IMG/VR virus record: IMGVR_UViG_3300035703_000006
Coordinates: 62,001-126,000 of that record
Direction: 5' to 3' (one strand)
DNA length: 64,000 nucleotides
Shown here one piece after another: positions 31,307-63,322 of the stretch. The first letter of the stretch is position 1. Each line of letters begins with the position of its first letter. The notes below the pieces were generated by a model. The model saw nothing but the letters and a program-made list of their open reading frames with translations, did not search any database and was not told the origin of the DNA. Made by a program: the position numbers and the translations under genes.

Positions 31307-31332
31307 ATTTGTAACAAAAAATACAAAAAAAC

Positions 31333-31362
31333 TTGACTATATAACTGCAGAAGAGGTATAGT
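31333..31362 (+). promoter_or_regulatory. Host-RNAP (early) promoter TTGACT-18 bp-TATAGT
   Basis: Would start transcription near 31369-31371, at the first riboswitch-like element. Confidence 0.6.
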
Positions 31363-31370
31363 ACCTCTAA

Positions 31371-31421
31371 CGTTCATTTGCTATTTGCAAATAGCAAACG
31401 GAAGTAAGCCGACTCGGAACG
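31371..31421 (+). ncRNA. glnA-type glutamine riboswitch-like aptamer 1
   Basis: P1 CGTTC/GAACG; P2 is a perfect 22-nt palindrome (31377-31398); junction CGGAAGTAAG matches the glnA E-loop motif; P3 is short and atypical. Confidence 0.65.
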
Positions 31422-31441
31422 GATCAAAACCTACTATAGGT

Positions 31442-31610
31442 CGTTCATCTATGGAAGCACTCATTCTAACTTGCTTGCAGGCACAATTAATTGTTGGGAG
31501 AATTCATAAACAGGAAATTCCCAAACAAGTAAAGAATGATTTAATTTGGGAGATTAAACAAATTTCTCCCAAAGAGTGCAAAATAGACGCAAAAGCCGAC
31601 TGAAGGAACG
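31442..31610 (+). ncRNA. glnA-type glutamine riboswitch-like aptamer 2 with ORF-containing P2 loop
   Basis: 5' CGTTCA-TCTAT; 3' ATAGA-CGCAAAAGCCGACTGAAGGAACG; shares GCCGACT..GGAACG with aptamer 1. Confidence 0.6.
31451..31603 (+). CDS. 50-aa peptide nested inside aptamer 2 (MEALILTCLQAQ...ECKIDAKAD)
   Basis: Open frame from ATG 31451 to TGA 31603; two Cys; the last codons are also the aptamer 3' strand. Confidence 0.6.
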   Translation: MEALILTCLQAQLIVGRIHKQEIPKQVKNDLIWEIKQISPKECKIDAKAD

Positions 31611-31641
31611 CTCTTTAACCTCAAAATTAAGGAGAACCCTA

Positions 31642-31800
31642 ATGTCTAAAGTCGTTTATAGAGGTTGTCAGTATGACACCGAAGATGCAAAAAAAGAGTA
31701 TATATCCTGGTATAACCAAACTCATGCCCCTGCACATCCACAAAATACATATCGTGGAGTAGCATATCGTCCATGCAAAAACATGGAGGTGCAAAAATGA
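31642..31800 (+). CDS. DUF4278-like small protein
   Basis: Two YRG motifs (VVYRGCQY, TYRGVAY); AAGGAG Shine-Dalgarno. Confidence 0.8.
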   Translation: MSKVVYRGCQYDTEDAKKEYISWYNQTHAPAHPQNTYRGVAYRPCKNMEVQK

Positions 31801-31898
31801 ATACTTACTTCGTTCTTTATCTTAAGAGAAAAGCAAAAAAAGAAAAACTTCTTAAACTTGCACAATTAAATATGGCAAAGCAACCACAAGTTGCTTGA
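31797..31898 (+). CDS. 33-aa basic peptide (MNTYFVLYLKRKAKKEKLLKLAQLNMAKQPQVA)
   Basis: ATGA-coupled to the DUF4278-like gene; GGAGG upstream; followed by a terminator. Confidence 0.55.
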   Translation: MNTYFVLYLKRKAKKEKLLKLAQLNMAKQPQVA

Positions 31899-31902
31899 AT
31901 TT

Positions 31903-31935
31903 AGAGGGGCATTTGTCCCTCTTTTTTTATAAATA
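31903..31935 (+). terminator. Terminator (AGAGGG/CCCTCT + T run) abutting late promoter TATAAATA (31928-31935)
   Basis: Seen directly in the sequence. Confidence 0.8.
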
Positions 31936-36464: not shown

Positions 36465-36535
36465 GCGGATATGGTGTAGTGGTAACATACCATCCTTCCA
36501 AGTTGTAGTCACGGGTTCGAATCCCGTTATCCGCT
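36465..36535 (+). tRNA. tRNA-Gly (anticodon TCC), no encoded CCA
   Basis: Acceptor GCGGATA/TATCCGC, D-loop AGTGGTA, loop CTTCCAA, T-arm ACGGG-TTCGAAT-CCCGT, discriminator U; two mismatches in the anticodon stem. Confidence 0.88.
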
Positions 36536-61885: not shown

Positions 61886-61959
61886 GGTAAACAAATGTTA
61901 CGAAATCAAAACAATTCTTAACATTGTTAAACACCCGATTAACCGAGACCTATGGGTGT

Positions 61960-62050
61960 ATAAATTACGTCTCTCATGCCCACACTGGAGGGTGGTGTGG
62001 GAAATAACGTACTATCCAGTTCCCCCTGGACTTTTACTTACCCTTTAACG
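61960..62050 (+). ncRNA. Structured psbA leader, PhotoRC-II-like
   Basis: ACGTCTCTCAT, then CCCACAC/GTGTGGG and TCCAG/CTGGA hairpins directly 5' of psbA; family identity from recollection only. Confidence 0.5.
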
Positions 62051-62053
62051 AAA

Positions 62054-63064
62054 ATGACTGCTTCTATTGCACAACGCAATTCTACTACTAATCTCTGGGA
62101 ATCTTTTTGCCAGTGGGTTACTTCAACCGATAACCGCCTTTATGTGGGTTGGTTCGGTGTTCTTATGATTCCAACGTTGCTTGCTGCAACGACTTGCTTC
62201 ATCATCGCATTCATCGGTGCTCCCCCTGTGGACATTGATGGAATTCGTGAACCCGTTGCTGGTTCACTCATGTACGGAAACAACATCATCTCTGGTGCTG
62301 TGATTCCTTCGTCCAACGCAATTGGACTGCACTTTTACCCCATCTGGGAAGCTGCTTCTCTAGATGAATGGCTTTACAATGGTGGACCTTTCCAACTGGT
62401 AGTGTTCCACTTCCTCATTGGTATTTACTGCTATATGGGTCGTGAGTGGGAACTTTCATATCGTCTAGGTATGCGTCCTTGGATCATGGTTGCTTACTCT
62501 GCACCTGTTGCTGCTGCAAGCGCAGTGTTCCTGGTCTATCCTTTTGGTCAAGGTTCTTTCTCTGATGCAATGCCTCTAGGTATCTCTGGCACCTTTAACT
62601 ACATGCTTGTGTTCCAGGCAGAGCACAACATCCTGATGCACCCCTTCCATATGCTTGGAGTTGCTGGTGTGTTTGGTGGTTCTCTGTTCTCTGCTATGCA
62701 TGGATCTCTTGTTACCTCCTCACTGGTTCGTGAAACCACTGAGAATGAGTCACAGAACTATGGTTACAAGTTCGGTCAAGAAGAAGAGACTTACAATATT
62801 GTTGCTGCTCATGGTTATTTCGGACGCCTTATTTTCCAATACGCTTCCTTCAATAACTCCCGTTCGCTGCACTTCTTCCTCGCTGCCTGGCCTGTTGTCG
62901 GTATCTGGTTTACTGCTCTTGGTGTAAGCACTATGGCTTTTAACCTTAATGGATTTAATTTCAACCAGTCTATCGTTGATGGTCAGGGTAAGGTTATTAA
63001 CACTTGGGCTGACGTTCTGAACCGTGCAGGTCTGGGCATGGAAGTGATGCACGAGCGCAACGCT
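62054..63064 (+). CDS. psbA: Photosystem II D1 protein, exon 1 (337 codons)
   Basis: [15 protein letters not shown]...MHERNA; true start at 62054 (MTASIAQR). Confidence 0.98.
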
Positions 63065-63322
63065 AGATTTGTTGGTGTTGTTGCCTAGTAATAGGCATTA
63101 GAAAAATCGGGTTAAACGGGGAAACTCTCAAGTAGACAATCCCGTACCAAGTCAGAAAGGGTTTAAGTTTTCTGAAAGGTCTAACGACTAGGTAGTGAGT
63201 CCCAACAATAATCTACCCACGAATGCCCGACTCCTTAATAAACATAAGGATGAAGAGATAGTCTGAACTTACTGGCGACAGTAAGAAGTAAAGAATAAAG
63301 AGTCTTTACGATAACACAATTG
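63065..63322 (+). ncRNA. Group I intron (258 nt, IA-like, ORF-less) in psbA
   Basis: Exon ends in U and intron ends in G. P1: CAACGCU pairs with GGUGUUG. P3 TCGGG/CCCGA; P4 ACGGGGA/TCCCGT; P7 GACTA/TAGTC; extra P7.1 GGTAG/CTACC; P9 TTACTG-GCGA-CAGTAA. Removal restores HERNA|HNFPLDL. Confidence 0.95.

What the first reader, a model, noticed from the sequence alone, without database searches (positions are those of the whole stretch)
31642..31898. DUF4278-like protein plus a 33-aa basic peptide as the riboswitch output: candidate phage control of host nitrogen assimilation
The short operon downstream of the aptamers ends at a clear terminator. It encodes a double-YRG DUF4278-like protein and a very basic peptide. 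In cyanobacteria the glutamine-synthetase inactivating factors are small basic proteins, and IF17 carries a DUF4278-type N-terminus under glnA-riboswitch control. The phage products may tune host glutamine synthetase, or lysis timing, to nitrogen status (inference). The location next to nrdAB fits a link to nucleotide supply.
Basis: partly seen in the sequence, partly recalled or inferred. Interest (0 to 1): 0.62.

Follow-up and report, generated by a model that had tools for sequence, protein, structure and literature searches.

The report
Glutamine-switched small-protein pair in cyanophage
A freshwater cyanophage carries, behind glutamine-sensing RNA switches, its own copy (split into two tiny coupled genes) of a small protein that its cyanobacterial hosts also place behind glutamine switches, so the virus can probably read the nitrogen state of the infected cell, but what the pair acts on is still unknown.

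Summary
ORF1 (31642-31800, 52 aa, two YRG motifs) and ORF2 (31797-31898, 33 aa, pI 10.3) overlap by ATGA, follow two glutamine aptamers and end at a terminator. Both are real genes: relatives lie in more than 150 viral contigs and dN/dS is 0.27 for ORF1 and 0.08-0.17 for ORF2.

ORF1 is DUF4278-like, but below Pfam's cut-off for the window's copy. ORF2 shows no detectable homology to the IF7-like glutamine-synthetase-binding part of IF17. It matches the N-terminal helix of 59-62 aa picocyanobacterial proteins (helix plus two YRG repeats) that sit behind glutamine-II riboswitches. The phage pair is therefore a permuted, split copy of that host protein. At least 27 other viral contigs carry the fused form.

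An NtcA box (GTAN8TAC) lies upstream in 81 of 97 distinct relatives. An 8-bp hairpin sequesters ORF1's ribosome-binding site.

Control by nitrogen status is well supported by sequence. The target, glutamine synthetase or another, is untested. Adjacency to nrdAB is not conserved, and nothing points to lysis.

In passing: the second aptamer encloses a conserved 50-aa ORF in its P1a loop, with the start codon inside the stem. I found no description of this arrangement in the papers searched.

The parts
31311..31324 (+). NtcA-box consensus GTA-N8-TAC, 13 nt upstream of a TATATA -10-like hexamer (31338-31343)
   Evidence: Read. A box at a fixed offset from the first aptamer occurs in 81 of 97 distinct upstream regions of relatives, against 2-7% of background 110-nt windows. 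The N8 varies while GTA and TAC are kept. NtcA binding itself was not tested.
31333..31362 (+). Promoter-like region. The scan reads TTGACT-18-TATAGT. An alternative reading uses TATATA at 31338-31343 as the -10 element, followed by a leader hairpin at 31352-31368.
   Evidence: 10 of 12 matches. In relatives the box-to-TATATA spacing is constant, and a hairpin of about 20 nt of varying sequence is present or absent. The transcription start is unknown.
31369..31425 (+). Glutamine aptamer 1 (glnA type, compact)
   Evidence: RF01739, 34.3 bits (gathering score 35), E 1.4e-5, full model length. The minimum-free-energy fold gives P1 and P1a. The core is invariant in the four-phage alignment.
31441..31611 (+). 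Glutamine aptamer 2, split. The 5' half (P1 and P1a strands, about 31441-31454) and the 3' half (about 31585-31611) enclose a 50-aa ORF in the P1a loop.
   Evidence: The halves are identical to compact aptamers 2 of relatives, which score 33.5-38.9 bits for RF01739. Both halves are invariant in 26 sequences. The closing helix 31457-31462 with 31575-31580 has three pairs changed on both sides; covariation score 0.170 against 0.120 shuffled, 0 of 500 as high, slid registers 0.086 or less.
31451..31603 (+). Nested 50-aa ORF. Its ATG lies in the 5' strand of P1a and its TGA stop lies inside the aptamer core.
   Evidence: phrog_504, E 1.5e-4. dN/dS about 0.36. 260 viral stretches encode relatives. 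In all 80 loci fetched the aptamer's 5' half overlaps the ATG, and 76 are followed by a YRG ORF.
31611..31634 (+). Hairpin that sequesters the SD: CUCUUUAA pairs with UUAAGGAG. The SD AAGGAG is at 31629-31634. The hairpin starts directly after the 3' strand of P1 of aptamer 2.
   Evidence: Minimum free energy -8.6 kcal/mol, 73% of the ensemble, z -1.9. It also forms in the 285-nt leader fold. The sequence is conserved in relatives.
31642..31800 (+). ORF1, 52 aa, double-YRG DUF4278-like protein
   Evidence: AF2 model: hairpin 3-12, helix 14-28, hairpin 35-42, mean pLDDT 65. dN/dS 0.27.
31797..31898 (+). ORF2, 33 aa, basic helix peptide, translationally coupled to ORF1 by an ATGA overlap
   Evidence: It is homologous to the C-terminal helix of fused 48-49 aa phage proteins and to the N-terminal helix of host glutamine-II-riboswitch DUF4278 proteins. 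The helix part of the fused protein is modelled at pLDDT 85-95.
31903..31929 (+). Intrinsic terminator (8-bp stem, 5 G-C pairs, 4-nt loop, T7)
   Evidence: Relatives have G+C-rich hairpins of different sequence followed by a T run at the same place.

Best explanation
The locus is a self-contained cyanophage cassette that reads nitrogen status. Its order is: NtcA-box promoter, two tandem glnA-type glutamine aptamers, a hairpin that hides the ribosome-binding site, two translationally coupled small ORFs, and a terminator.

ORF1 (YRG hairpins, DUF4278-like) and ORF2 (basic helix) together carry the two modules of a 59-62 aa picocyanobacterial protein: an N-terminal helix followed by two YRG repeats. 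The hosts place that protein behind glutamine-II riboswitches. In the phage the module order is permuted. The protein is split in two in this window and fused in other phages.

Inferred mechanism, by analogy with gifB (PMC6212724): when glutamine is high, the aptamers fold around the ligand, the SD hairpin opens, and ORF1 and then ORF2 are translated. The phage thus makes its own copy of a host glutamine-controlled small regulator, independent of host transcription.

Shown here: the anatomy, that both ORFs are coding, their homology to the host modules, and the association with the riboswitches and the NtcA box. Inferred: that the switch turns expression ON, the role of NtcA, that the two products act together, and the target. 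I rate glutamine synthetase as the most likely single target (about 0.25) and another nitrogen-regulatory partner about equally likely.
For: Anatomy and coupling.

Real genes: relatives of ORF1 in 94 viral stretches and of the fused form in 125. ORF2-type ORFs start at the stop overlap in most loci. dN/dS is 0.08-0.27.

The modules belong together: fused single-chain forms of 48-49 aa occur in at least 27 contigs and in isolate S-CREM1, in 13 distinct variants, with dN/dS 0.16.

Host counterpart: the fused profile hits 39 of 201 Cyanobiaceae genomes. The host proteins are helix plus two YRG repeats and score 28.8-29.5 bits against PF14105, above the cut-off. Eight of nine sit directly behind RF01704 at 44-57 bits. 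An HMM built only from phage ORF2s finds the host helices at E 2e-9 to 1e-5.

Regulation: the aptamer cores are conserved. The NtcA box occurs in 81 of 97 relatives against 2-7% background. gifB has both a glutamine ON-switch and NtcA repression (PMC6212724; PMC5714215). Cyanophages carry many NtcA sites (PMC3037559).
Against: The window's aptamer 1 is 0.7 bit below Rfam's gathering score. Aptamer 2 departs from the consensus core (ACGCAAAAG where the consensus has ACGGAAGUAG). Ligand binding is therefore not assured.

The window's ORF1 is below Pfam's cut-off.

Only 6 of 121 Cyanobiaceae genomes match the phage ORF1 profile, so the YRG part has diverged and is not a recent capture.

No expression data exist: no RNA run holds the locus.

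The NtcA box is 13 nt from the -10-like hexamer, not about 22 nt as in canonical activated promoters. Its effect cannot be read from sequence, and the transcription start is unknown.

The helix shows no significant similarity to the part of IF7/IF17 that binds glutamine synthetase. The function of the host counterpart has itself never been tested (PMC6316151).
Confidence: 0.65

Rival explanations
1. ORF2, alone or with ORF1, is a phage glutamine-synthetase inactivating factor that works like IF7/IF17: a basic peptide binds host GS type I and shuts it off when glutamine is high.
For: It has the same regulatory logic as gifB, with a glutamine aptamer plus an NtcA box. It has the same module order as IF17, YRG repeats followed by a basic helix. 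The host short DUF4278 proteins have been proposed, without a test, as IF-like (PMC6212724, PMC6316151).
Against: The helix has no significant profile similarity to the IF7-like region (P 0.09 and 0.22), and the spacing of the three essential arginines is not reproduced. In IF17 the DUF4278 part is dispensable for inactivation. The review states that earlier work ruled out IF-mediated GS control in marine picocyanobacteria, the clade that holds the closest host counterparts.
Confidence: 0.25
2. The pair acts on another node of the host nitrogen network, such as PII, PipX/NtcA, GOGAT or a transporter, as other small cyanobacterial regulators do (for example PirA, PMC8092223; CP12, PMC7760959).
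For: One host DUF4278 gene lies directly upstream of glnB (PII) (L207). Weinberg et al. list PII among the genes associated with glnA RNA (PMC2864571). The helix is not IF7-like.
Against: There is no direct evidence for any partner. The glnB adjacency was seen in one genome and was not surveyed.
Confidence: 0.25
3. The small basic products bind nucleic acid or the ribosome, for example feeding back on their own leader RNA, rather than a metabolic enzyme.
For: Both products are basic (pI 9.0 and 10.3). Gene and structured leader are tightly linked across host and phage.
Against: No known RNA-binding fold or family matches. The fused form is modelled as one long helix.
Confidence: 0.1
4. The cassette times lysis (a holin or antiholin-like peptide), or ORF2 is a chance ORF whose translation alone matters.
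For: In a few related phages, and in a Prochlorococcus genome, a hydrophobic peptide of about 29-30 aa occupies ORF2's position.
Against: The window's ORF2 has no hydrophobic segment (GRAVY -0.38). It is under strong purifying selection at the protein level (dN/dS 0.08-0.17). It has host and fused homologues. The neighbouring genes are not lysis genes.
Confidence: 0.04

Closest known systems
gifB (IF17) of Synechocystis sp. PCC 6803 with its glnA-type glutamine riboswitch and NtcA-repressed promoter (PMC6212724, PMC5714215)
   Same: A glnA-type aptamer lies in the leader, and an SD-blocking helix is proposed to open on glutamine binding. There is an NtcA box at the promoter. The product begins with YRG repeats (DUF4278) followed by a basic helical segment.
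   Different: IF17 is one chain of about 149 aa (PMC7760959). Its C-terminal part is IF7-like and carries three essential arginines. The phage has two chains of 52 and 33 aa, and its helix shows no significant similarity to that part. The phage has two aptamers in tandem, and the second holds an ORF.
Picocyanobacterial small DUF4278 proteins behind glutamine-II (Downstream-peptide, RF01704) riboswitches, called 'IF17-like' in PMC6212724 and PMC6316151
   Same: Both modules are homologous: the helix at E 2e-9 to 1e-5, and the YRG repeats through PF14105. The size class is the same, and a glutamine aptamer lies upstream in both.
   Different: The host has one chain with the helix first. The phage has the YRG repeats first, with the helix as a separate coupled ORF or fused at the C-terminus. 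The aptamer class differs: glnA type in the phage, type II in these host loci. The function of the host protein is also unknown.
Synechococcus phage S-CREM1 glnA RNA and the 48-aa ORF SCREM1_206 (PMC9964418)
   Same: It has the same cassette: tandem aptamers, the same SD region and a terminator.
   Different: S-CREM1 has compact aptamers and a single fused ORF (one YRG motif plus the helix). The paper annotates only the RNA and does not discuss the gene.
Cyanophage auxiliary metabolic genes that copy small host regulators, for example CP12 (PMC7760959)
   Same: A phage-borne copy of a small host regulatory protein, presumably expressed during infection.
   Different: Here the phage keeps metabolite-sensing control of the gene. 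No expression or function has been shown.

Membership tests
DUF4278 (Pfam PF14105) | Match to the family HMM at or above the curated cut-off (25.3 bits) | tested here: not met
   The window's ORF1 scores 21.5 bits, E 3e-4. All 31 aligned relatives match at E<=0.01, the best at 8e-7. The nearest Atlas clusters are viral, with PF14105 in 12-13% of members. I call it DUF4278-like, a divergent viral branch.
DUF4278 (Pfam PF14105) | Repeated YRG motif in a protein of tens of residues | tested here: met
   Y6-R7-G8 and Y37-R38-G39 are invariant in 31 sequences. They are modelled as two beta-hairpins.
IF17 (GifB) glutamine synthetase inactivating factor | C-terminal IF7-like region with the conserved arginines needed for GS inactivation | tested here: not met
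   hhalign of the ORF2 profile, and of an enriched helix profile, against the C-terminal 72 aa of 22 IF17 proteins gave P 0.09 and 0.22 over 8-9 columns. The ORF2 HMM finds nothing in the IF17 loci.
IF17 (GifB) glutamine synthetase inactivating factor | glnA-type glutamine aptamer in the 5' UTR and an NtcA site at the promoter | tested here: met
   Aptamers. GTAN8TAC at 31311-31324, conserved in 81 of 97 relatives. This is sequence evidence only; binding and regulation were not tested.
IF17 (GifB) glutamine synthetase inactivating factor | Binds and inactivates glutamine synthetase type I | not testable with these tools
   This needs a biochemical assay. The one co-fold job gave no answer and counts neither way (see Tried and rejected).
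Glutamine riboswitch, glnA type (Rfam RF01739) | Covariance-model score at or above the gathering score (35 bits) | tested here: not met
   Aptamer 1 scores 34.3 bits, E 1.4e-5, over the full model. Homologous aptamers in relatives score 33.3-53.7 bits. The window's aptamer 2 is not scored because the nested ORF splits it. I treat both as glnA-type by homology. Ligand binding is untested.
Picocyanobacterial glutamine-II-riboswitch small proteins (helix plus YRG repeats) | Sequence homology of both modules | tested here: met
   Helix: the phage-only HMM hits nine host proteins at E 2e-9 to 1e-5. YRG: the ORF1 HMM hits host short DUF4278 proteins at E 2e-9 or weaker. The host proteins reach the PF14105 cut-off.
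Picocyanobacterial glutamine-II-riboswitch small proteins (helix plus YRG repeats) | Single chain with the helix N-terminal to the repeats, behind RF01704 | tested here: not met
   The phage order is repeats then helix, in two ORFs or fused. The aptamers are glnA type, not RF01704.
Holin or other lysis peptide | At least one transmembrane segment | tested here: not met
   The window's ORF2 has GRAVY -0.38, 8 K+R, and no hydrophobic run.

The most novel reading that the evidence does not exclude
The tandem glutamine aptamers of these phages are dual-use RNAs. Translated ORFs (50 aa in aptamer 2 here; 68 aa with a signal-peptide-like start in aptamer 1 of relatives such as L014) lie inside the P1a loops, with their start codons in the P1a stem. 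Glutamine-driven closure of the aptamer would then hide the nested ORF's start while freeing the SD of the downstream DUF4278/helix pair. That would make one RNA a reciprocal, ligand-operated switch between two protein outputs. Alternatively, ribosomes translating the nested ORF could veto aptamer folding.
Probability: 0.3. Interest if true: 0.85.

Novelty: new variant of a known kind. Interest (0 to 1): 0.62.

Why it matters
Glutamine riboswitches in front of DUF4278 genes are among the most common regulatory RNAs of cyanobacteria. Only IF17 has an assigned function. The short 'IF17-like' proteins of Prochlorococcus and Synechococcus are a recognised open question (PMC6316151).

Phages have kept both modules of that protein, with glutamine and probably NtcA control, across more than a hundred contigs and in several arrangements: split, fused and duplicated. 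This shows that the helix-plus-YRG unit is under selection and useful during infection.

It also offers cultured systems in which to test the function: S-SRM01, DSL-LC02/03, S-CREM1 and S-PM2. If the target is glutamine synthetase or PII, this would be a phage lever on host nitrogen assimilation that is itself gated by the cell's glutamine level.

The ORFs nested in aptamer loops would, if functional, add a new way of wiring a riboswitch.

Tried and rejected
(1) Co-fold of a Cyanobium-like host GS (L212:1492-2910:-) with the fused 48-aa phage protein (alignment A5). Verdict: no answer, score 0.00. This is not evidence either way. GS was folded as a monomer without an alignment.

(2) ORF2 profile against PDB sequences: only chance ribosomal-protein hits at E>3.

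(3) NCBIfam: nothing for ORF1, ORF2 or the fused form.

(4) Pfam and PHROGs for ORF2: nothing.

(5) ESM Atlas for ORF2: no usable hit.

(6) Word-based protein search with ORF1: only 17 close, unnamed relatives.

(7) AF2 model of ORF1: mean pLDDT 65. I judged this too weak for a fold search, so none was run.

(8) RNAalifold on 26 split aptamers: P1 and P1a are invariant, so no covariation can be read there.

(9) Expression. No RNA run holds the locus. The two 'RNA-Seq' runs hold only small pieces at depth about 2 and are probably DNA. Read laying was given 3,101 letters.

(10) Genome-contig scan with the ORF1 profile: 6 loci. By their cassette sequences, two (L087, L088, filed under Acetobacteraceae and Bacteroidota MAGs) look like phage contigs binned into MAGs.

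(11) The alternative upstream ATG at 31773 for ORF2 and the GTG at 31576 for ORF1 were rejected. Neither is conserved in relatives, whereas the SD-preceded starts are.

No genetic code other than table 11 was used.

Full report
**Setting.** The window belongs to a 247-kb virus record. It is a T4-like cyanomyovirus: it carries PhotoRC-II RNA, a group I intron and a tRNA, and nrdA and nrdB lie just upstream of the finding. Its nearest isolates are the Synechococcus phages S-SRM01, DSL-LC03 and DSL-LC02. Near-identical DNA occurs in metagenomes of 13 studies, mostly freshwater.

**Observation.**
- ORF1 runs from 31642 to 31800 (52 aa). It has an AAGGAG Shine-Dalgarno 7 nt upstream and two YRG motifs.
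- ORF2 runs from 31797 to 31898 (33 aa). It starts in the ATGA that ends ORF1 and has a GGAGG 8-9 nt upstream.
- A terminator with an 8-bp stem and a T7 run follows at 31903-31929.
- ORF2 is strongly basic: 8 K+R against 1 D+E, pI 10.3.

**Are they genes?** Yes.
- ORF1 relatives were found in 94 viral stretches.
- In 77 of 85 loci an ORF of at least 20 codons starts at the stop overlap (ATGA or GTGA). Of the 47 distinct products, 44 are ORF2-type peptides in three subtypes that align with each other. K15 and A22 are invariant.
- dN/dS by the Nei-Gojobori method is 0.08-0.17 for the ORF2 subtypes and 0.27 for ORF1. dS is near saturation, so these values are rough.

**What ORF1 is.** The window's copy scores 21.5 bits against PF14105, below the 25.3 cut-off. 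Every one of 31 aligned relatives matches that family, the best at E 8e-7. PHROG 5049 matches at E 7e-12. The nearest ESM Atlas clusters are viral and partly annotated as DUF4278. AF2 gives hairpin, helix, hairpin with the YRG motifs in the hairpins, at moderate confidence (pLDDT 65). PF14105 is present over the cut-off in 128 of 151 sampled cyanobacterial genomes. Many of the best hits lie in open frames of about 130-210 residues, and those I translated are IF17-like chains.

**What ORF2 is.** This is the main new result, and it rests on two steps.
- First, S-CREM1 and at least 27 viral contigs encode a single 48-49 aa protein: one YRG motif followed by an ORF2-type helix. It occurs in 13 variants, with dN/dS 0.16. 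The two window products are therefore parts of one functional unit. AF2 models the fused form as one long helix, with the ORF2-like part at pLDDT 85-95.
- Second, the fused profile matches 39 of 201 genomes of the host family Cyanobiaceae. The host proteins are 59-62 aa, with an ORF2-like helix at the N-terminus followed by two YRG repeats. They reach the PF14105 cut-off. Eight of nine lie directly behind a glutamine-II riboswitch (RF01704, 44-57 bits). An HMM built from phage ORF2s alone finds these host helices at E 2e-9 to 1e-5.

The phage pair is thus a permuted and split version of the host's small DUF4278 protein that sits behind a glutamine riboswitch. Klähn et al. called this group 'IF17-like' and showed glutamine-dependent reporter expression for a Prochlorococcus MED4 example. 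Its function is unknown.

**What ORF2 is not.** I extracted 22 IF17 proteins from cyanobacterial genomes. I then compared their IF7-like C-terminal 72 residues with the ORF2 profile, and with a profile enriched with fused and host helices. hhalign gave P 0.09 and 0.22 over 8-9 columns. The ORF2 HMM finds nothing in the IF17 loci. The resemblance is one of kind, a basic helix after YRG repeats. It is not demonstrable homology.

**Regulatory input.** Four elements lie upstream of ORF1.
- Aptamer 1 (31369-31425) is a full-length RF01739 match 0.7 bit under the gathering score.
- Aptamer 2 is the same unit as the compact second aptamers of S-CREM1, S-PM2 and many contigs, which score 33-39 bits. 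In the window its P1a loop holds an ORF (see below).
- Directly after the 3' strand of P1 of aptamer 2, an 8-bp hairpin pairs CUCUUUAA with UUAAGGAG and so hides ORF1's SD. Its free energy is -8.6 kcal/mol, 73% of the ensemble. It also appears in the fold of the whole leader (z -3.5). This is the arrangement proposed for gifB, where glutamine binding opens the inhibitory helix and turns translation on. For the phage, that direction of switching is inferred.
- A GTAN8TAC NtcA box lies at 31311-31324. In 81 of 97 distinct upstream regions of relatives such a box sits at one of two fixed offsets from the first aptamer. Background is 2-7% of 110-nt windows. The half-sites are kept while the N8 varies. 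The two offsets differ by a leader hairpin of about 20 nt.

The box lies 13 nt from a TATATA hexamer. This is closer than in canonical NtcA-activated promoters, where the site is centred at -41.5 (PMC3898017 abstract). The gifA and gifB sites are at positions considered repressive. Without a mapped transcription start I cannot say which applies here. Many NtcA sites in cyanomyoviruses were reported before.

**Context.** The cassette has its own promoter and terminator and sits in different neighbourhoods. nrdB is upstream in only 7 of 93 distinct contexts. Others are speD-like, a tRNA, a conserved hypothetical gene or unclassified. In isolates it lies near td/phoH, speD, or DNA polymerase/regA. 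The proposed link to nucleotide supply therefore has no support from conserved position. Among 50,697 isolate phage records, tblastn finds ORF1 relatives only in DSL-LC03, S-PM2 and S-CRM01. S-SRM01, DSL-LC02 and S-CREM1 carry more distant or fused forms.

**Mechanism and probabilities.**
- Shown by sequence: a cassette whose two coding modules and whose sensors are all shared with host genes placed behind glutamine riboswitches.
- Inferred: at high glutamine the SD opens and ORF1 is translated, followed by ORF2 through coupling. The products act together. The phage thereby supplies a host-type small regulator that the infected cell may no longer make.
- Target: glutamine synthetase about 0.25, another nitrogen-network protein about 0.25, nucleic acid or ribosome about 0.1, lysis under 0.05.

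The one co-fold job gave no answer and is listed only under things tried.

**Nested ORFs.** This was noticed in passing and only partly followed.
- Aptamer 2 spans 31441-31611. Its two halves are invariant in 26 distinct sequences.
- They enclose a 50-aa ORF (31451-31603). Its ATG lies in the 5' strand of P1a, and its TGA stop lies in the conserved aptamer core.
- The ORF is coding. Its dN/dS is about 0.36, and two diverged protein subtypes keep frame and length.
- It was found only in this setting. In all 80 fetched loci the aptamer's 5' half lies over the ATG, and 76 are followed by a YRG gene. These 80 are the closest of 260 matches.
- A helix closing the loop shows changes on both sides in 3 of 6 pairs. 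The covariation score is 0.170 against 0.120 when shuffled, with 0 of 500 shuffles as high, and slid registers score 0.086 or less. By the tool's own caveats this is moderate support.
- Metagenome contigs from two studies hold variants that join 31425 to 31588 through a short compact P1a. Forms with and without the ORF therefore coexist.
- In L014 and others, aptamer 1 is split in the same way by a 68-aa ORF with a signal-peptide-like start, whose ATG again lies in the P1a strand.

None of the papers I searched or read (Weinberg 2010, Klähn 2018, the S-CREM1 and Melnitz papers) describes ORFs inside these aptamers.

**Novelty.** Glutamine riboswitches in cyanophages and their tandem arrangement are known, as is the association of these aptamers with DUF4278 genes in cyanobacteria. 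The following appear new, as far as the searched literature goes:
- the phage output gene is identified as a permuted, split copy of the host helix-YRG protein;
- ORF2 is a conserved module with a host homologue;
- the NtcA box is conserved;
- ORFs are nested in the aptamer loops.

I rate the finding a new variant of a known kind.

Noticed in passing
window 31441-31611 (ORF 31451-31603): The second glutamine aptamer encloses a conserved 50-aa ORF in its P1a loop. The start codon lies in the P1a stem and the stop codon lies in the aptamer core. Relatives of the ORF were found only in this context: all 80 loci fetched.
   Followed up: partly
L014 1176-1427 (also L006, L011, L019, L024, L027, L029, L059, L066, L073, L084): In these relatives the first aptamer is split in the same way, by a different ORF. 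In L014 it is 68 aa with a signal-peptide-like N-terminus, and its ATG again lies in the 5' strand of P1a.
   Followed up: partly
window 31425/31588: Metagenome contigs from two studies (X1, X3) join 31425 to 31588. In X1 there are 20 other letters between the two sides, forming a compact P1a. This is a natural presence/absence polymorphism of the nested ORF.
   Followed up: no
window 31311-31324: NtcA-box consensus GTAN8TAC upstream of the cassette, conserved at fixed offsets in 81 of 97 relatives. Its spacing to the -10-like hexamer is 13 nt, which is not the canonical activating geometry.
   Followed up: partly
window 31369-31425 and 31585-31611: The two tandem aptamers depart from the single-aptamer consensus in complementary ways. 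Unit 1 keeps ACGGAAGUA but shortens the 3' GAAGGAACG to CGGAACG. Unit 2 keeps GAAGGAACGC but has ACGCAAAAG. Loci with a single aptamer, such as L039, are fully canonical (53.7 bits). In the minimum-free-energy fold the 3' P1 strand of unit 1 pairs with the 5' P1 strand of unit 2. I have no explanation for this.
   Followed up: no
L063, L065, L070 (about 1653-1739); L092 808-900: In some phages, and in a Prochlorococcus genome, a hydrophobic peptide of about 29-30 aa takes ORF2's place, overlapping the stop of the DUF4278 gene.
   Followed up: no
L056-L079 (for example L059 1358-1653): Many relatives carry two different double-YRG ORFs in tandem, a Q-rich type and the HAPxHP type of the window, each overlapping the next by ATGA, before the ORF2-type peptide.
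   Followed up: no
L207 1501-2425: In a high-G+C Cyanobium-like genome a 73-aa protein with three YRG repeats lies directly upstream of glnB (PII).
   Followed up: no
L087, L088: Two contigs filed under Acetobacteraceae and Bacteroidota MAGs carry the complete phage cassette. They are probably cyanophage contigs binned by mistake.
   Followed up: no
window 61919-62015, 63055-63285, 36465-36535: PhotoRC-II RNA (84.6 bits), a group I intron (61.5 bits, probably in psbA) and a tRNA (64.9 bits) elsewhere in the window.
   Followed up: no
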